Sequence record: PQ464595.1
Length of the DNA stretch: 64,000 bases
Direction: 5' to 3' (one strand)
Below, piece after piece: positions 10,236 through 42,051 of the stretch. The position numbers were made by a program, and so were the translations under genes. The notes beneath the pieces were generated by a model, which was not told where the DNA came from, did no database searches, and saw only the letters and a program-made list of their open reading frames with translations. Each line of letters opens with the position of its first letter. Position 1 is the stretch's first letter.

Positions 10236-10562
10236 TTATTTGGTCTTAAGTTCTGCTACTACAGCAGCAACTAAGTCCGGTGTAAAATCAATGCCGAAAA
10301 CTTCGGAATAATGTTTTACTGTACCTTCATAACCATGACGCTTGTCATTCAAGCGGTAACGCAATTCAAGAATCGCATTGTCAAAGTTAAACCAAGGATT
10401 GTTTTGACTCGCATGTAAGCGACCCCAATCAGTCAATGGTACGAAACCTTCATCAGCAGACTTACCCCGAAGAATATTATAGATAATATGCTCGTGTACA
10501 GTGTGCTCTTTCTCAAGTTTCCAGGTTGTTGTTACAGTAATGAATTGTTCTTTGGTCAACAT
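10236..10562 (-). CDS. hypothetical protein
   Basis: 108-aa ORF with SD. Confidence 0.7.
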   Translation of the reverse strand: MLTKEQFITVTTTWKLEKEHTVHEHIIYNILRGKSADEGFVPLTDWGRLHASQNNPWFNFDNAILELRYRLNDKRHGYEGTVKHYSEVFGIDFTPDLVAAVVAELKTK

Positions 10563-10682
10563 AGTATGTTCCTTTTGGATAGTAATTAATTTAGTGTTTT
10601 GTTCTGAATTAACTTTATCCGGTGGACCAGTACTGAATTTCTATAGCATCATAGGATTTACCTTTTTGTTTGTTTACTTAAT

Positions 10683-22285: not shown

Positions 22286-22404
22286 TGCGGTGAGTACAGG
22301 AATCGAACCTGTGACTTCGGCGTGAAAGGCAATTGTTTGATTGCTGTTAGATTCAGTACTGGAATCCATTTTTTTACGCTATTTTACCACTAAACTAACT
22401 CACC
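22286..22404 (-). tRNA. tRNA-Glu(TTC) interrupted by a 46-nt CAGCAA insert (22331-22376) at 29/30
   Basis: Deleting the insert gives GCGGC-CTTTCAC-GCCGA; acceptor GGTGAGT/ACTCACC, G73. Confidence 0.75.
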
Positions 22405-23627: not shown

Positions 23628-23707
23628 TAGTGCGAGGGGATGGACTTGAACCACCGACACGGAGTTACCCTAAGATAATCTTGCTCTACCATCTGAGCTA
23701 CCCTCGC
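23628..23707 (-). tRNA. tRNA-like gene with aberrant anticodon arm (anticodon not assignable)
   Basis: Perfect acceptor GCGAGGG/CCCTCGC, D and T arms; anticodon/variable region about 5 nt too long with irregular pairing (AGATTATCTTAGGGTAACTCCG). Confidence 0.6.
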
Positions 23708-30607: not shown

Positions 30608-30718
30608 GGTGCTAAGAACAGGATTCGAACCTGTAAGGAAACCTCGCGGTACTTCCCACGTCCTATTGTCGCTTTCGCTATCGTCAGACGCTACGTTTAC
30701 CAATTCCGTCATCTCAGC
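30608..30718 (-). ncRNA. class-II tRNA scaffold with a 24-nt expanded anticodon loop
   Basis: GCTGAGA/TCTTAGC, Leu-like D arm, GCGTC/GACGT stem, loop contains GC-GAAA-GC, long variable hairpin, T arm. Confidence 0.7.
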
Positions 30719-30881: not shown

Positions 30882-30956
30882 TGTGGCTCATACCAGATTC
30901 GAACTGGTGTGGACAGAGATTTAGAGTCTCCCGCTACGCCTCTCAGCTAATGAGCC
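30882..30956 (-). tRNA. amber suppressor tRNA (anticodon CTA)
   Basis: Cloverleaf GGCTCAT/ATGAGCC, arm GGAGA-CTCTAAA-TCTCT, A73. Confidence 0.9.
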
Positions 30957-30977: not shown

Positions 30978-31006
30978 ATTATACCAGAGTTTTTTAAGTC
31001 GTTCCA
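30978..31006 (-). promoter_or_regulatory. TGAAACG-class promoter (TGGAACG variant) driving the suppressor tRNA
   Basis: TGGAACG-N16-TATAAT. Confidence 0.7.
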
Positions 31007-32359: not shown

Positions 32360-32767
32360 CTAATTAGTGTACTTAACTTTTACTTCGTGTTCGATACCAT
32401 TAGCATCGAAATAAGTTACTGTTACACCAGTTAATGATGACCAGCAACCTTCATTACAAGGCCAATTCAGACTGTCGAGTTCTTCGAAATCTTCAGGGGC
32501 TTCGTCATAATCATACATGTCGAAGAATATCCAGAAACCTTCAGCTTTATCGTAATTATCATAACCACCTTTACCGCGAGGATACAGGTTTTGACAATTT
32601 TTCAATACTTCAAGGAGCTTTTTAACGATTTCTGGATCTTCGTATACCGCTTCTTCAGTATCATAGAAATCAGCATCACCATGCATGAAATCCATTTTTA
32701 CCACATATTTGTTTTTATATGGTGCTGGAGGAACGATAGGGTTCAGTACTGTTAATTCAACATTCAT
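32360..32767 (-). CDS. hypothetical protein (FMHGDAD family)
   Basis: KMDFMHGDADFY motif. Confidence 0.75.
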   Translation of the reverse strand: MNVELTVLNPIVPPAPYKNKYVVKMDFMHGDADFYDTEEAVYEDPEIVKKLLEVLKNCQNLYPRGKGGYDNYDKAEGFWIFFDMYDYDEAPEDFEELDSLNWPCNEGCWSSLTGVTVTYFDANGIEHEVKVKYTN

Positions 32768-33260
32768 AATTTACTCACTCAGTGCATTAAACTTCTTCAT
32801 TAGTAATTCATAATCATCAATTACCGGATGAACTTTATTTTCTGGTGTAGCATAAGCCGAGAAGTCCAGAATAAAAGTACAACCAGTACAGTCACCGTAA
32901 CCACTAAAGGTAACTACCAAATGATCGTTTGGTCCATAATTCCCATTTTGGGCAATTGCTTTTGCCATAGAGAAAATATAACCCATATTACCCTTTTCAG
33001 TACTGAAAAGAACTTTATGAGCATCTTCACGGCAATTCTTTTCACCGATCTTACGATACAAATGTGCATCATAACGTTTAATGTACTCATGCTCAAACAA
33101 GTCATATGTTTGTTCAGGAGTGAAGTACTGTAACTGTAAAGTACAGAGATCGTGAAGACCGGAGTTTTCACCTTCATAGATAAACGTTTGGAATTTCAGA
33201 GTTGGTTCTTTCATAAGGATATTACCTTAAAAAAGCACTTCCGAAGAAGTGCTATTCTTT

Positions 33261-33827
33261 TTATTTAGGTAAAGAGTTTAAGTACCTCTTACCCGCCTGG
33301 ATAAGTTTCTTCTTCTTGATTTTAAAAGAAGTACTATCCTGTCCACCAAACATTGTACAGTTCGCAAGGATTTCAGCCCATGCAGTTATATACAGAGTAG
33401 GTGCTAAAGGATCAGTCCAGATGGTATCAAAGTCCTCGGACTTAGCCATGTGGAATGTCATATCTTTACGCATCAATTCTGAAATAACTGATTCTTCTGG
33501 AAATAGGTTCATCCATACATCAGCACTAACATTAGCGTGATCAGGGAAGTGAACTTTACCTTCATCATCAACAGTACGACACAATGGTTTACCACAATCA
33601 TGATATTCTTGATAACGCAGTACAATATCATCAGGCAGAATCTTATCTTTAATTTTGCCGTATACTTCAAGCAGTACAGGATCGCCCTATCCAGTGTCAA
33701 GTTCAGAGATCAGTACTTTATACTGTTCTTGAACCATCAGACCATGTGCGTGAACACTAAGCCCTTTCATCTGTTCAGTACTTTGCATTACATGAAGTAG
33801 TTCTTCGAAAGTGTTAGGATAAATCAT
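33261..33827 (-). CDS. HD-domain phosphohydrolase with an in-frame TAG at codon 47 (33687-33689)
   Basis: Manual translation from ATG 33827: ...SVHAHG...ELDTG*GDP...YHDCGKP...HFPDHA; the HD motifs lie on both sides of the stop in one frame. Confidence 0.8.
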
Positions 33828-34162
33828 TTAGCACCTCCGCGAAATAGTTGATATTTCTTAAAGATACTACGCTGTTCAGCAGTTACTGGAGCACTGGCAA
33901 AGGCAGTGAAGCCATAATCCCAATCAGGTTCATGGAACTGGACAAATCCAATACCAGAATCTTTGAGTTCATCAAATGCTTTTTGTAACTTATGTTTATT
34001 CTTACATGAAATAACGATAAGAGAACTAGTCTCAGTACTGTTATTTTCGAAGGCCAAGCCGCTTTCATAAGCTGCGTGGTTTGATTGTACCACAATCTGT
34101 TCTAACGGTAAGTCCGTGCGAACAAATACGTAGATCCAAGTTTTTTCATTCTAGTGAGCCAT
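33824..34162 (-). CDS. PTH2-like peptidyl-tRNA hydrolase with an in-frame TAG at codon 4 (34151-34153)
   Basis: GAGG SD, then ATG GCT CAC TAG AAT...WIYVFVRTDLPLEQIVVQSNHAA; the PTH2 N-terminal strand lies upstream of the GTG start used by the ORF track. Confidence 0.75.
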
Positions 34163-34401
34163 TTTTATTTCCTCTATTTTGGTTTACTTAATTAATTCCC
34201 AATGCCATAAATTCCCACGTATTGGCATGGTTTCACCAGCATCCAGATAGGTTTCCCCATCAAAAATTACTGGTTGTGAAAGTTCGAATCGTTCTTGGTT
34301 AGTTAACATATAACTACCCTCGATTTCTGTACCTAATGGGATTCGAGCACTATCAGAATATACGCATACAAATTTACCCATATATTTCTCCTTAATTAAA
34401 A

Positions 34402-39275: not shown

Positions 39276-39644
39276 TTATGCTAAAATATTTAAAATATTT
39301 TTCACCATCTGAATATGATCAAAGCTTATCAGTGGATCAATAGTACTTAACTGGAAATGCCATTCTTCTGAAATATCCAAATTATGAGTGACGATAATAC
39401 CGCCAATCATGTACTCTATGTTTTTATTTATGAAATCAACATCCAGTACTGGTTTATCATCTACCAGAAAACGATGTAAATCTTTATTTTTATTTGATGC
39501 TACCGTATGAATATAGGTAAACTCAGTTCCTTGATGGAAGTATGAATAAAGAGGGGTTTTCATCATCCCCTCTTTAACAGAGTCTGAGCATTCTAATACA
39601 CGTTCAATAACACTTTCAACTTCAAGTATATCCACTACCAGCAC
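39276..39644 (-). CDS. hypothetical protein, EEWxFQxST paralog family
   Basis: ISEEWHFQLSTI motif. Confidence 0.7.
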   Translation of the reverse strand: MLVVDILEVESVIERVLECSDSVKEGMMKTPLYSYFHQGTEFTYIHTVASNKNKDLHRFLVDDKPVLDVDFINKNIEYMIGGIIVTHNLDISEEWHFQLSTIDPLISFDHIQMVKNILNILA

Positions 39645-40063
39645 CGTAAACGTTTGACCGCCTTAATTTCATCCTTATTAGGATAGATGATTAACCCTGT
39701 TTGAGTTAAACCATCAAAGAAGTTAAAGCCGTAATCCTGAATGTCATGCACAAAGAAACCAGGATGATAATCGTGTGCGTCGATTTCTGCTTGTATCTTA
39801 GCTTTGACCGTATTCATATGGTCTTCATCTTTGATACGCAGAACAATCTTCCTGCGGCCTTCGGTCAACCAACCTTCAAAGTTTGCCACTGGCATGATCA
39901 GGTCTTCATTGTCCTCTGTACGACGACGCTCTTTGAACGTATTGTACTGACCCCATACCTGGTCTAAACCATGACCAACTTGTACTGCGAACTTACCTAA
40001 TGGCATGTTCAGGTCTTCACGAAGAAGAACATAGCACTTATACTGTAGTACTGGCTTTTCCAT
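39635..40063 (-). CDS. peptidyl-tRNA hydrolase, PTH2 family
   Basis: YVLLREDLNMPLGKFAVQVGHG...KIVLR...D.G...T.T.L.I.P. Confidence 0.88.
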   Translation of the reverse strand: MEKPVLQYKCYVLLREDLNMPLGKFAVQVGHGLDQVWGQYNTFKERRRTEDNEDLIMPVANFEGWLTEGRRKIVLRIKDEDHMNTVKAKIQAEIDAHDYHPGFFVHDIQDYGFNFFDGLTQTGLIIYPNKDEIKAVKRLRCW

Positions 40064-42051
40064 TTCTAATTCTCCGAGTAGCTTCTAAAATATTATCACA
40101 AAATTCAATGTGAGCGATTATAGCATCCATCGGGAGTTCCGTCAAGTCCTGTCGGGTCATTTCCATGAAATATCCTTCCTCAGTACAAATCTTCCTACAA
40201 CGGGTGAAGTTAATAATTCCATCCGGTGCTGAATGACTATAATGACCACTATAACGATTAGTATAATACATCGTTAGGGTATCATTCCGAGAATCATAAT
40301 TCATGTAAAACGTTCTACCCGTATGAGGCTTATAGATTACTTCTACAAGCCCTTCATCGTTACATTTAATCGTGTAGTTTTCAGAAACATGAGTAAATGT
40401 AAAATAACAATGATCAGCACGGTTGACAGTCTTATAGACAGTACTAGCTCGTTTTGCGACCCTGCCTAATATGTCGCTTATTGGGTTGGCTTTCCAACTC
40501 ATTCAAAATTCCTTCTAAGTAGTCAGAACCTTCTGAGTAATCATTACGTTCCAACCATTCTTTAAGGAATTTTACCGCAAAACTTTGATCTTCTGTAGAC
40601 ATAATCCGATTCCGTACAACACGCACAAAAAAGCGTACATAGTCCAGATAATCAGATGAAACAGAACCTTTTTCTTCACAAAATTCGATACACGACTGAA
40701 CATAATGCCTCGTTAGATCCATAGTTCGTTCAACTTCACTCGAACGTTCCCATGCGTTAATCCACACTTTATAACGTTCGAACCCCGCTTTAAAGATATA
40801 TTCCTCTGGTACGTAACCAGACCATACATCATTGATATAAACGCAGTACTCACTAACTGACGGATGCCAATGTACGTATGTAGTACTCCACATAACCTCT
40901 GGAAATTCATCAGCAAGATAATCAATGAAATCTTCATTCAGATTAGGATCTTTTCGTTCAAATTTATATCCACGTTGCCAGTTAGCGTTGTCTGTCATTT
41001 TATCAGGTCATCCATAAAAGAGCAATCATCTTTTTTCGGTGTTTCAACGATGACGATACCACCGTTATAATCTGGATGTTCTTCATTCCAGTATTCTTCT
41101 AACCAATCTTCATCTTCATAGCAGTTATGAACATCAAATTCAATATCAATGCCACGATCTGCCAGAATCTTATTAACTTGACTAAGAACGTATTCAGCAC
41201 TATCCCATACAGAACGTGCGTAATCCATTTCTTCATCAGTTACATTAAATGTTACCTTAGTACTCATTTAGTTTCACCTTTGTAATCTTCTTCTTCGTGC
41301 CATGAACAGCCGACTTCACAATCACCATCTACTAGTGACCATTGAATGCCATGAAGAATATTACCCTGTAATACATATGATTCACCCCAAGCTTCTTCTG
41401 AGCCAATATTAAGGCTTTCAATGAAACGCTCGAACGCAATTTCTAGATCAACCTGATCACCTTCAGGTAATGTCAAACAAATAGTTTTATTCATTTTCAT
41501 CCGTTGGATAGTTATAGAACCCGTAGCCACTAACTTCTTCATACAGTTGTCGCATAATACGACGATTTGCTTCTTGGCGGCGTTGATGTTCTTCAGTGGT
41601 TTCTAATTCAAATTTTCCATCACGCACAATCATACCACGTAAACCGTGACCATGATCATAACGCATACACATACTTTCAATCAAACGAGCATCTGGCTCT
41701 TTTGGTAAATTTGGTTTCATTACTTGTCCTTTATTCCGTTAAGTACTTCCATGAACTTCTCTACATCAGTACTTTCAAAGAATAAATGTTCCCATTGAGT
41801 CATTTTCTGAAAGTGCCAAGCTTCATCAGCAAGACGAGAGAAGTTAGGATATTTATAACGGCGTTTTGAACCCATCCAATCTTCAACTACAAGAAAGTCA
41901 CTACCAGGAAAATAACGAAAATTCCAGCACTTGTTGTACAAGAATGTTAAATCAATTTCAATCATCTGAACACCATCTTCTTTCTTACAGCGTTCAGTTA
42001 ATTCATATGCCAAGTTTTCTGAGCATTCGAAGTACTGTTCAATGAAATTCA

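What the first reader, a model, noticed from the sequence alone, without database searches (positions are those of the whole stretch)
33261..33827. HD-domain hydrolase gene split by an in-frame amber codon
Seen: a continuous 188-codon frame with a single TAG at codon 47, between the first His motif and the HD motif. The ORF track reports only the 3' part. Inference: full-length enzyme is made only when the phage suppressor tRNA is active.
Basis: partly seen in the sequence, partly recalled or inferred. Interest (0 to 1): 0.8.

Follow-up and report, generated by a model that had tools for sequence, protein, structure and literature searches.

The report
Amber-gated tRNA-repair genes with suppressor tRNA
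A phage gene that looks broken by a stop codon is in fact built that way: it, and the gene before it, can only be fully translated when the phage's own stop-reading tRNA is working, and the same three-part arrangement recurs in dozens of unrelated large phages.

Summary
The window is Erwinia phage Kaldavass. The TAG is not an error or a pseudogene. It is invariant in 8 GenBank phages of two genera and in 5 metagenomic contigs, and both flanks evolve as coding sequence (dN/dS 0.03-0.15, dS about 1). All these phages encode a tRNA(CUA) 2-4 kb downstream.

The finding is one part of a larger unit. The overlapping upstream gene, a PTH2-type peptidyl-tRNA hydrolase, has its own conserved TAG at codon 4. 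Across 60 dereplicated lineages of large phages:
- 57 have the HD and/or PTH2 gene interrupted by a stop.
- The gates are 86 TAG, 4 TGA and 0 TAA.
- The gate codon matches a nearby suppressor tRNA anticodon in 38 of 39 lineages.

The HD protein resembles the tRNA-binding C-terminal half of a CC-adding enzyme.

Best reading: a conserved module in which a phage suppressor tRNA licenses translation of two tRNA-end enzymes. I found no prior description. Published work on XacN1 could not identify its suppressor's targets, and XacN1 carries this gated gene. The decoding and the enzymology are inferred, not shown.

The parts
33261..33827 (-). HD-domain gene, 188 codons plus TAA. ATG at 33827-33825 overlaps the TGA of the upstream gene (ATGA).
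   Evidence: Homologues. HD Pfam hits in 44/98 homologues. Model of the intact homologue P0014 has pLDDT 96.6. Best structural match is the CC-adding enzyme 3wfo-3wfs.
33687..33689 (-). In-frame amber codon (codon 47), context GGA TAG GGC. It corresponds to a variable surface-loop position between helices 2 and 3.
   Evidence: Invariant in 13 related sequences. The family column is E/T/K/I/Q/R. Loop position from the model.
33824..34162 (-). PTH2-like peptidyl-tRNA hydrolase gene, 112 codons plus TGA. GenBank annotates only the 3' 89 codons, from a GTG.
   Evidence: 40% identical to the PTH2 domain of XacN1 ORF364. Profile hit to solved PTH2 structures, E 2.5e-7. Model pLDDT 93.4 and top 13 Foldseek hits all PTH2.
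34151..34153 (-). In-frame amber codon 4 of the PTH2-like gene (ATG GCT CAC TAG AAT), directly before the first beta-strand of the PTH2 fold.
   Evidence: conserved as MAH*/MAQ*/MTH*/MSH* in all relatives. The PTH2 alignment starts right after it.
34169..34174 (-). Shine-Dalgarno-like GAGGAA, 6 nt upstream of the ATG of the PTH2-like gene.
   Evidence: Read.
33234..33253 (-). Intrinsic-terminator-like hairpin (8-bp stem, TTCG loop, T run) immediately after the HD stop codon. It closes the two-gene operon.
   Evidence: sequence.
30883..30956 (-). tRNA with anticodon CUA (amber suppressor). Canonical cloverleaf, anticodon loop CUCUAAA, G1:C72, discriminator A73, CCA not encoded. ARAGORN's 'Pyl' label only reflects the anticodon.
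   Evidence: Rfam tRNA 53.7 bits, gathering 29. Syntenic CUA tRNAs in GAP32, CBB, BF, Yen9-04 and XbC2.
30978..30986 (-). Extended -10-like element TGgTATAAT, 21 nt upstream of the tRNA(CUA) 5' end.
   Evidence: Read. Not flagged by the two-hexamer scan. Inference only.
10236..10652 (-). Candidate third client of the suppressor: AAGG-N8-ATG ATG CTA TAG (TAG at 10643..10641), followed by a 134-codon frame of unknown function (phrog_22448). The amber-dependent part is a 26-residue N-terminal extension.
   Evidence: TAG and extension conserved in GAP32, CBB and Yen9-04, but decayed in BF.

Best explanation
The TAG at codon 47 is a programmed amber codon. The HD gene and the overlapping upstream PTH2-like gene (TAG at codon 4) form one operon. 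Its full-length products can be made only when the phage's own tRNA(CUA), encoded 2.3 kb downstream, inserts an amino acid at UAG in competition with host release factor 1. Without the tRNA the ribosome releases a 46-residue fragment lacking the HD metal site (and a 3-residue peptide for PTH2). The output of both enzymes is therefore set by the activity of the suppressor tRNA. This is a translational licence or feed-forward gate, comparable in logic to the in-frame UGA of prfB or to synthetic suppressor-tRNA gates. The HD protein is a stand-alone relative of the HD-containing, tRNA-binding C-terminal half of class-II tRNA nucleotidyltransferases, and PTH2 hydrolyses peptidyl-tRNA. Together, and sometimes fused, they most likely clean or recycle tRNA 3' ends. 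Shown here by sequence comparison: the conserved stops, the linkage, the codon-anticodon covariation and the folds. Inferred: that the tRNA is charged and decodes these UAGs, which residue it inserts (Lys or Gln most plausible), the substrates of the HD enzyme, and why the phage gates these genes.
For: (1) TAG at codon 47 in all 8 GenBank relatives of two genera and in 5 metagenomic contigs down to 77% aa identity. dN/dS is 0.03-0.15 on both sides with dS 0.7-1.3.
(2) The invariant His-Gly lies upstream of the TAG and the HD, HFPDH and DMxFH motifs lie downstream. The first in-frame ATG/GTG/TTG after the TAG lies beyond the HD motif.
(3) tRNA(CUA) is present in the window and syntenic in GAP32, CBB, BF, Yen9-04 and XbC2.
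(4) Independent gates occur at about six other positions of the same gene in other lineages.
(5) In 60 clusters, 57 have a gated HD and/or PTH2 gene. Gates are 86 TAG, 4 TGA, 0 TAA, against HD terminal stops of 44 TAA, 14 TGA, 2 TAG. The gate codon matches the local suppressor anticodon in 38 of 39 clusters, including TGA with tRNA(UCA) in L064 and L091.
(6) In 8 MAG contigs the only tRNA within 20 kb is a tRNA(CUA) directly after a gene starting SD-ATG-NNN-TAG.
(7) For N-terminal gates, the TAG-to-Met segment scores as the family's first helix (1.02 vs -0.81 bits/residue, p 4e-20). The SD precedes the pre-stop ATG in 24/36 clusters and the downstream Met in 1/36.
(8) The +4 base at gates is A 68, G 23, C 5, T 2, whereas ordinary terminators prefer T (p 2.5e-17). 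The window's genuine TAG terminators have +4 T.
(9) Folds: HD model vs CC-adding enzyme, TM 0.62. PTH2 model TM 0.71-0.76. HD-PTH2 fusions exist in both orders.
Against: There is no experimental evidence here of read-through, tRNA expression or aminoacylation. The suppressor's amino-acid identity is undetermined. About a third of gated clusters show no suppressor tRNA within 10 kb: most have no tRNA at all in the locus, while L089, L094 and L071 have tRNA arrays without a CUA tRNA. L097 has TAG gates but only a doubtful UCA tRNA. One Kaldavass-clade contig (L025) shows no CUA tRNA in its flank. The HD assignment rests on weak sequence hits (Pfam best 1e-4; PDB profile E 0.009) plus a predicted structure. 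The Kaldavass pieces themselves hit no Pfam family. The reason for gating is speculative: a repair enzyme that needs working tRNAs in order to be made is not an obviously sensible design.
Confidence: 0.82

Rival explanations
1. Sequencing error or recent pseudogene: the gene is dead and the TAG is an accident.
For: GenBank records annotate only fragments. Neither piece hits a Pfam family on its own.
Against: The TAG is identical in 13 independent sequences from two genera and from metagenomes. dN/dS is 0.03-0.15 on both sides with synonymous sites near saturation. There are no further stops or frameshifts. The same device appears in dozens of lineages.
Confidence: 0.01
2. Split enzyme or truncated product: the 46-residue peptide and a separately initiated C-terminal piece are the real products, or only the short peptide is.
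For: Gene callers and phrog_26054 treat the 46-aa ORF as a family. A TTG at 33584 could start a 107-aa fragment.
Against: No start codon or SD follows the TAG before the HD motif, and the TTG product would lack HD. The residues right after the TAG are conserved and align without a gap to intact homologues. A split product cannot explain gates at codon 3-4, nor the TAG-only rule with matching tRNAs.
Confidence: 0.03
3. Read-through or bypass without the phage tRNA: host near-cognate decoding, or a short hop of peptidyl-tRNA-Gly from GGA over UAG. T4 gene 60 also takes off from GGA-UAG at codons 46-47 (from my own knowledge).
For: The context GGA TAG GGC in the Kaldavass clade resembles the gene 60 take-off site.
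Against: No coding gap exists: homology continues at the next codon. Other clades have CCG TAG ATT, GGG TAG AGC or ATG ACG TAG GTT, with no matching landing codon. This does not explain why a CUA tRNA is kept next to the gene, or why TGA gates sit with UCA tRNAs.
Confidence: 0.05
4. For the N-terminal gates in other lineages and in the PTH2-like gene: ATG-NNN-TAG is a tiny upstream ORF, and the real protein starts downstream (at the conserved Met or an adjacent AUU) by termination-reinitiation.
For: Many database proteins and the family HMM start at the conserved Met. 33 of 98 gates are followed by ATT, a near-cognate start. In BF the third gene starts at its downstream Met.
Against: The TAG-to-Met segment is conserved as protein and the SD sits before the pre-stop ATG, not the Met. 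Reinitiation would work with any stop, yet TAA is never used in 90 gates. In the PTH2-like gene the fold's first strand begins right after the TAG, and the next start is 19 or more codons away. It cannot apply to the codon-47 gate.
Confidence: 0.07
5. The phage is simply a genome-wide TAG-recoded (code 15) phage or uses pyrrolysine, so nothing is specific to this gene.
For: ARAGORN labels the tRNA 'Pyl'. Database gene callers translated the gene with TAG=Gln. TAG is a rare terminator in the window: 8 of 133 ORFs.
Against: Only three genes in 64 kb have a supported in-frame TAG. Real genes still end in TAG, with a strong +4 T context. The tRNA has a canonical cloverleaf that scores well on the general tRNA model, and the 'Pyl' label follows from the anticodon alone. 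The HD-gene site is a variable column in the family, so no special residue is required there.
Confidence: 0.03

Closest known systems
Stop-codon recoding in phages (TAG or TGA read as sense via phage suppressor tRNAs; crAss-like, Lak and other gut phages; bioRxiv 10.1101/2021.08.26.457843, PMC9523058, PMC10879173)
   Same: A phage-encoded suppressor tRNA lets in-frame stop codons in phage genes be translated in a standard-code host. Gating of gene expression by the tRNA has been proposed there too.
   Different: In those phages 26-71% of genes carry in-frame stops, mostly late, structural and lysis genes. Here the genome keeps the standard code, and I found two or three clients in 64 kb. The clients are always the same two tRNA-related enzymes, physically linked to the tRNA, typically gated at codon 3-4. 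That paper does not mention PTH2 or HD.
Orphan CUA suppressor tRNAs of standard-code jumbo phages (XacN1, PMC5852040; RsoM2USA, PMC8504454)
   Same: The same kind of tRNA in the same kind of phage. Both phages carry this HD gene.
   Different: Those papers could not name the target genes. Here XacN1 ORF364 (an HD-PTH2 fusion) is seen to begin SD-ATG-AAG-TAG, and RsoM2USA_91 to begin ATG-AAA-TCG-TAG. The XacN1 read-through screen would have missed these because the pre-stop ORF is only 2-3 codons long.
Aquifex aeolicus CC-adding enzyme, class-II tRNA nucleotidyltransferase (PDB 3WFO-3WFS; its tail binds the tRNA elbow, PMC4810234)
   Same: The whole phage protein superposes on the enzyme's C-terminal half (TM 0.62, about 198 columns, top 17 hits). 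It shares the hHDxGKP...F.(D/E)H motif.
   Different: The phage protein lacks the N-terminal polymerase-beta head, so it cannot add nucleotides. Identity is 16-21%. Its activity is untested.
PTH2 peptidyl-tRNA hydrolases (archaeal/eukaryotic type; noted in jumbo phages as ribosome-rescue or RNA-repair genes, PMC7824862)
   Same: The upstream gene has the PTH2 fold and profile. The window also has a canonical PTH2 paralogue at 39635-40063.
   Different: This paralogue is divergent (Pfam E 0.013, below the cut-off), is paired or fused with the HD protein, and is stop-gated. The canonical copy is not gated.
Autoregulatory in-frame stop of prfB (RF2 frameshift site), and synthetic suppressor-tRNA feed-forward gates (PMC7969014)
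   Same: An early in-frame stop makes the output depend on the balance between termination and an alternative decoding event. The synthetic circuit uses an amber codon plus a suppressor tRNA to license expression.
   Different: prfB uses frameshifting and senses its own product. The synthetic gate is man-made. Here the device is natural, relies on a dedicated tRNA, and its regulatory purpose is unknown. The prfB comparison rests on my own knowledge.

Membership tests
HD-domain metal-dependent phosphohydrolase superfamily | Conserved H...HD...D metal-binding residues | tested here: met
   Invariant or nearly invariant H30-G31, H78-D79, H95/H99, D124 and H128 in 98 homologues. The Kaldavass sequence has SVHAHG, YHDCGK, HFPDHA and DMTFH.
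HD-domain metal-dependent phosphohydrolase superfamily | Significant match to Pfam HD (PF01966) | tested here: inconclusive
   Neither Kaldavass piece hits any Pfam family. 44 of 98 homologues hit PF01966 only weakly, best E 1e-4.
HD-domain metal-dependent phosphohydrolase superfamily | All-alpha HD fold | tested here: met
   The model of the intact homologue P0014 (pLDDT 96.6) is all-helical. Lower-ranked Foldseek hits are HD enzymes (PhnZ, YfbR, PgpH, MESH1) at E > 0.1.
HD-domain metal-dependent phosphohydrolase superfamily | Phosphohydrolase or nuclease activity | not testable with these tools
   Needs enzymology.
Class-II tRNA nucleotidyltransferase (CCA/CC/A-adding enzymes) | N-terminal polymerase-beta-like nucleotidyltransferase head domain | tested here: not met
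   The protein is 188 residues and aligns only to the C-terminal half of 3wfo-3wfs (TMt 0.28-0.30; profile hit to chain residues 305-359). It is therefore not a member, only a relative of that enzyme's C-terminal region.
PTH2 peptidyl-tRNA hydrolase (upstream gene) | PTH2 alpha/beta fold and profile similarity over the full length | tested here: met
   Profile vs PDB: 2zv3 at E 2.5e-7, plus 1wn2, 1rzw, 1q7s and 1rlk. Foldseek top 13 hits are all PTH2, TM 0.71-0.76. Pfam PTH2 is above its cut-off for the XacN1 fusion (25.3 vs 23 bits) but below it for the Kaldavass piece (16.2 bits).
PTH2 peptidyl-tRNA hydrolase (upstream gene) | Hydrolysis of peptidyl-tRNA; catalytic residues | not tested
   Invariant R11, D13, Q22, H25, E74 and P75 are noted but were not mapped onto known catalytic residues.
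Programmed suppression by a cognate phage-encoded suppressor tRNA | In-frame stop conserved under purifying selection | tested here: met
Programmed suppression by a cognate phage-encoded suppressor tRNA | Well-formed tRNA whose anticodon matches the in-frame stop, co-occurring and covarying with it | tested here: met
   (38 of 39 clusters match; TGA gates with UCA tRNAs).
Programmed suppression by a cognate phage-encoded suppressor tRNA | Demonstrated read-through product and aminoacylated tRNA | not testable with these tools
   Needs proteomics, reporters and tRNA sequencing.
Genome-wide stop-codon reassignment (genetic code 15) | A large fraction of genes with in-frame TAG; TAG no longer used as a terminator | tested here: not met
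   Two or three gated genes in 64 kb. TAG still ends real genes (32360-32767, 39635-40063, 40444-40998).
Pyrrolysine decoding | Atypical tRNA-Pyl architecture and the pylS/pylBCD genes | tested here: not met
   The tRNA fits the general tRNA model end to end with a normal D arm and loops. The HD-gene site tolerates many residues in the family. Pyl genes were not searched for.
T4 gene 60-type translational bypassing | Take-off codon matched by an identical landing codon across a non-coding gap | tested here: not met
   GGA-TAG is present, but there is no gap: homology resumes at the next codon. Other clades lack any matching codon pair.

The most novel reading that the evidence does not exclude
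The suppressor tRNA in these otherwise standard-code phages is not a general decoding aid. It is a dedicated regulatory RNA of a self-contained circuit: tRNA(CUA or UCA) + stop-gated PTH2 + stop-gated HD enzyme. The circuit measures the state of the translation system (charged phage tRNA versus release factor) and releases tRNA-3'-end cleaning enzymes in proportion. This could be a counter-measure to host defences that block or damage tRNA ends, or a checkpoint before the phage remodels the host tRNA pool. It would be a natural translational licence device, evolved repeatedly at different codons of the same genes.
Probability: 0.3. Interest if true: 0.9.

Novelty: new variant of a known kind. 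Interest (0 to 1): 0.82.

Why it matters
- **Open question:** it gives a concrete answer to a question stated in the literature, namely what the amber-suppressor tRNAs of standard-code jumbo phages are for (the XacN1 authors could not identify target genes). In these phages, clients of the tRNA include a PTH2-like and an HD-domain gene that sit beside it.
- **Annotation:** two gene families are systematically mis-annotated. They appear as fragments, with wrong starts, or with an artificial Gln in metagenomic protein databases.
- **Evolution of recoding:** this is a minimal, evolutionarily stable form of stop-codon recoding with one tRNA and two or three client genes. It may be an intermediate on the path to genome-wide recoding, or an independent regulatory device.
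- **Function:** it links the HD protein to tRNA biology through three independent lines: the fold, fusion with PTH2, and genetic linkage to a tRNA. That makes its function directly testable.
- **Tools:** the tRNA-gate pairs are natural, diverse parts for translational control in synthetic biology.

Tried and rejected
- **Plus strand:** the plus-strand reading of the coordinates is full of stops. The gene is on the minus strand.
- **Pfam on the pieces:** Pfam on the two Kaldavass pieces gave nothing. PHROGs gave only families of unknown function.
- **Gln at position 47:** P0001, P0002 and P0004 seemed to show a sense codon in close relatives, but the DNA has TAG. The Gln is an artefact of gene calling with TAG=Gln.
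- **blastn for the tRNA:** blastn with the Kaldavass tRNA(CUA) found it only in XbC2, which suggested the other phages lack it. Their suppressor tRNAs are too divergent for blastn and were found by annotation and ARAGORN.
- **Origin of the suppressor tRNAs:** nearest-neighbour comparison with 633 sense tRNAs was uninformative. Lys(CUU) was the commonest nearest neighbour, but only weakly.
- **Theta-ribozyme idea:** I considered whether a ribozyme leaves a cyclic phosphate on the suppressor tRNA for the HD enzyme to heal. Rfam shows no ribozyme near the tRNA, and the paper does not discuss end chemistry. Dropped.
- **Other window candidates:** four further 'ATG-few codons-TAG-long ORF' candidates (TAG at 41605, 23445, 3975, 2911) were rejected, because homology in GAP32 starts only at the downstream Met and the TAG is not conserved.
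- **Backup stops:** the distance to the next in-frame stop after TAG terminators does not differ from that after TAA or TGA.
- **Literature:** searches for a prior description of PTH2/HD gating found none.
- **Not done:** a family tree to count gate origins, and a scan of the rest of the Kaldavass genome.
Full report
**1. What is there**

The window is 100% identical to Erwinia phage Kaldavass (PQ464595.1). This is a 367-kb jumbo phage related to GAP32, CBB and XbC2 (Mimasvirus) and to BF and fHe-Yen9-04 (Eneladusvirus).

The feature is on the minus strand. The ATG is at 33827-33825, there are 188 codons, the TAA is at 33263-33261, and a single TAG sits at codon 47 (33689-33687). The plus strand of the same interval does not code.

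The 64-kb window carries 26 tRNA genes, all on the minus strand. One has anticodon CUA, at 30883-30956.

**2. The stop is conserved and selected**

All eight related GenBank genomes have TAG at codon 47, with the frame open to a TAA at codon 189. Every record annotates a 46-aa ORF plus a fragment.

Three database proteins appeared to carry Gln at the site. Their five contigs have TAG in the DNA, so the Gln comes from a gene caller using TAG=Gln. One of these contigs is only about 77% identical and has a different context (GGG TAG AGC).

Pairwise dN/dS is 0.03-0.15 for codons 1-46 and also for codons 48-188, with dS 0.7-1.3. Both halves have therefore stayed under protein-level selection, in one frame, for a time long enough to nearly saturate silent sites, and the TAG never changed.

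The invariant His-Gly of the family lies before the TAG. The HD, HFPDH and DMxFH motifs lie after it. No ATG, GTG or TTG follows the TAG until after the HD motif. Neither piece could be a working enzyme alone.

In the family alignment the site is a variable column (E, T, K, I, Q, R...) after a conserved Gly. In a confident model of an intact homologue it lies in the loop between helices 2 and 3. The site should therefore tolerate whatever residue a suppressor inserts.

**3. The suppressor tRNA**

The CUA tRNA fits the Rfam tRNA model end to end at 53.7 bits, against a gathering score of 29. It has a CUCUAAA anticodon loop, G1:C72 and A73. ARAGORN's 'Pyl' label reflects only the anticodon. An extended -10-like TGgTATAAT lies 21 nt upstream of it (read).

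GAP32, CBB, BF, Yen9-04 and XbC2 each have a CUA tRNA at the syntenic place, 2-4 kb downstream of the gene. These tRNAs have diverged stems but the same anticodon loop and discriminator.

**4. The neighbour is gated too**

The gene immediately upstream ends in a TGA that overlaps the HD start (ATGA). Its annotated GTG start is wrong. Homology to PTH2 peptidyl-tRNA hydrolases begins 19 codons earlier, directly after a TAG at 34153-34151. That TAG is preceded by GAGGAA-N6-ATG GCT CAC.

The TAG is conserved in every relative while the two codons before it vary: MAH*, MAQ*, MTH*, MSH*.

The PTH2 assignment rests on four results:
- 40% identity to the PTH2 domain of XacN1 ORF364.
- A profile match to solved PTH2 structures, E 2.5e-7, starting at residue 2 of the enzyme.
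- A confident model, pLDDT 93.4.
- Foldseek, where the top 13 hits are all PTH2 with TM 0.71-0.76.

A terminator-like hairpin follows the HD stop codon. The unit is therefore SD-PTH2(TAG4)-HD(TAG47)-terminator, with the tRNA(CUA) 2.3 kb further on.

**5. The pattern across phages**

The C-terminal piece finds more than 140 homologues. I analysed 80 IMG/VR loci, 15 genome or MAG loci and 6 further cultured phages, all with flanks.

Other lineages have a single TAG at other places in the HD gene:
- 'LPP*', 22-25 codons before the HD motif.
- Sites 45, 35 and 15-16 codons before the HD motif.
- Most often at codon 2-13, usually codon 3 or 4, after an SD and an ATG.

After clustering at 90% identity there are 60 clusters:
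- 56 have a PTH2-like gene adjacent on the same strand or fused to the HD gene.
- 57 have a gated HD and/or PTH2 gene.
- The gate codons are 86 TAG, 4 TGA and no TAA.
- The same HD genes end in TAA 44 times, TGA 14 times and TAG twice.
- Where a suppressor tRNA is present in the locus, its anticodon matches the gate in 38 of 39 clusters. This includes the TGA-gated loci L064 and L091, whose tRNAs are UCA.

Loci with an intact HD gene (Arash, ME3, L031, L034 and others) still keep the CUA tRNA, and there the PTH2 gene is gated.

In eight MAG contigs the only tRNA within 20 kb is a CUA tRNA placed directly after an HD gene that starts AAGGAG-N6-8-ATG-NNN-TAG.

The three homologues in clearly cellular contexts (Bosea, a Pseudomonas megaplasmid, Psychromonas) are intact and have no suppressor tRNA.

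The base after the gate stop is A in 68 cases, G in 23, C in 5 and T in 2. Ordinary terminators in the same loci favour T (p 2.5e-17). From established work on E. coli, a 3' purine favours amber suppression and a 3' U favours termination. This point rests on my own knowledge.

**6. The main rival for N-terminal gates**

Many database proteins, and hence the family HMM, begin at a conserved Met 4-13 codons after the gate. I therefore tested whether ATG-NNN-TAG is only a tiny upstream ORF.

Three results argue against that:
- A profile of the nine residues before that Met, built only from proteins that are unambiguously longer, scores the TAG-to-Met segments of gated genes at 1.02 bits per residue. 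Other frames and shuffles score -0.81 (p 4e-20).
- SD-like motifs precede the pre-stop ATG in 24 of 36 clusters, and precede the Met in 1 of 36.
- TAA is never used as a gate codon.

Together these make reinitiation unlikely. The rival does not apply to the codon-47 gate in any case.

**7. What the proteins are**

Pfam HD is hit weakly by 44 of 98 homologues. The best sequence and structure matches are both to the C-terminal, HD-containing, tRNA-binding half of the Aquifex CC-adding enzyme: profile E 0.009, and Foldseek TM 0.62 for the top 17 hits. Generic HD hydrolases score far worse.

The protein lacks the polymerase head, so it is not a nucleotidyltransferase.

HD and PTH2 are fused in both orders: HD-PTH2 in XacN1, Xoo-sp13, L065 and L084, and PTH2-HD in pT24, L083 and L093. 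The gate sits at the N-terminus of the fusion.

The fold, the fusions and the linkage to a tRNA all point to an enzyme pair acting on tRNA 3' ends. That is inference.

**8. How it most likely works**

Translation starts at the SD-ATG of the PTH2-like gene and meets UAG at codon 4. The coupled HD gene meets UAG at codon 47. With charged tRNA(CUA) the ribosome continues. Otherwise release factor 1 ends translation.

The amounts of both enzymes thus follow suppressor activity. The phage is not recoded: TAG ends 8 of 133 predicted ORFs, and the real TAG-terminated genes have a +4 T.

The purpose of the gate is open. It could be a timer, a proportional response to read-through, a checkpoint on the phage tRNA supply, or feedback on the suppressor itself.

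The inserted residue is also open. The suppressor tRNAs are class I and very diverse, mostly with A73. Some have the Gln-like U1:A72/G73.

**9. Relation to the literature**

Phage suppressor tRNAs and stop-codon recoding are known, but as genome-wide recoding of late genes.

For standard-code jumbo phages the targets were unknown. The XacN1 authors read through all 18 amber stops and found nothing. The RsoM2USA authors only speculated. Both phages carry this gene with a codon-3 or codon-4 TAG.

PTH2 in jumbo phages has been noted, without gating. I found no description of this module.

**10. Limits**

- Everything here is comparative. Nothing shows read-through directly.
- About a third of gated clusters have no suppressor tRNA within 10 kb. 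Most of those loci have no tRNA at all, and in XacN1 the tRNAs are known to lie in distant terminal repeats.
- L097 is a mismatch between gate codon and tRNA anticodon.
- The third client gene (TAG at 10643-10641) is only partly supported.

Noticed in passing
window 10236-10652 (-), TAG at 10641-10643: A third gene has the same start design (AAGG-N8-ATG ATG CTA TAG), followed by a 26-residue extension and then the annotated protein (phrog_22448, unknown function). The TAG and the extension are conserved in GAP32, CBB and Yen9-04. In BF the extension has decayed into several stops, so it seems to be an optional amber-dependent N-terminal isoform.
   Followed up: partly
L103 (XacN1 AP018399.1, ORF364), L104 (RsoM2USA_91), L108 (Xoo-sp13_327): These cultured jumbo phages have the gated gene (ATG AAG TAG; ATG AAA TCG TAG; ATG AAG AAG TAG), but it is annotated from a downstream ATG. 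The XacN1 paper states that no target of its two CUA tRNAs could be found.
   Followed up: yes
P0001, P0002, P0004 (Logan-derived database proteins); loci L013-L017: Metagenomic protein databases contain these genes translated with TAG=Gln. The proteins look intact and hide the stop codon, and 'translates_to_query' is 'no' under table 11.
   Followed up: yes
window 23630-23707 (-): ARAGORN calls a tRNA with a four-base anticodon 'ttag' (8-nt anticodon loop). Rfam tRNA scores it at 45.2 bits. It could be a quadruplet-decoding or frameshift-suppressor-like tRNA, or a degenerate one.
   Followed up: no
window 22288-22404 (-) and 30610-30718 (-): Rfam finds tRNA-like matches of 117 and 109 nt that ARAGORN does not call. 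Relatives annotate 110-127-nt tRNAs, 'tRNA-OTHER' or 'tRNA-Pseudo' at comparable places. These may be tRNAs with long insertions or introns.
   Followed up: no
window 39635-40063 (-): A second, canonical PTH2 gene (81% identical to GAP32_382) is not gated and itself ends in TAG followed by T. The phage therefore has one plain and one amber-gated PTH2 paralogue.
   Followed up: partly
L010:1996-2068 (CBB), L011:1667-1742 (BF), L012:1525-1600 (Yen9-04): The suppressor tRNAs of CBB, BF and Yen9-04 share two non-Watson-Crick pairs in the acceptor stem (U4-C69, U5-U68). Those of GAP32 and Kaldavass have perfect stems. The effect on charging identity or on EF-Tu binding is unknown.
   Followed up: no
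L039, L040, L041, L042, L047, L067, L088, L102 (IMG/VR loci): Several phages carry two different CUA tRNAs next to the module. Often one has A73 and the other has G73 or U1:A72 (Gln-like), which suggests two suppressors inserting different residues. L049 also has a UUA (ochre) tRNA.
   Followed up: no
window 33687-33692 (-): The codon pair GGA-TAG at codons 46-47 is the same pair, at the same codon numbers, as the take-off site of T4 gene 60 bypassing (from my own knowledge). There is no coding gap here, so it looks coincidental.
   Followed up: partly
L018, L019, L020, L022 flanks: The module sits among other tRNA- and NAD-related genes: RtcB RNA ligase and a second PTH2 in L018/L019, a PTH2 in L022, and NAMPT plus a NUDIX/CTP-transferase-like gene in L020. 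These are translation/RNA-repair islands of T4-like and jumbo phages.
   Followed up: no
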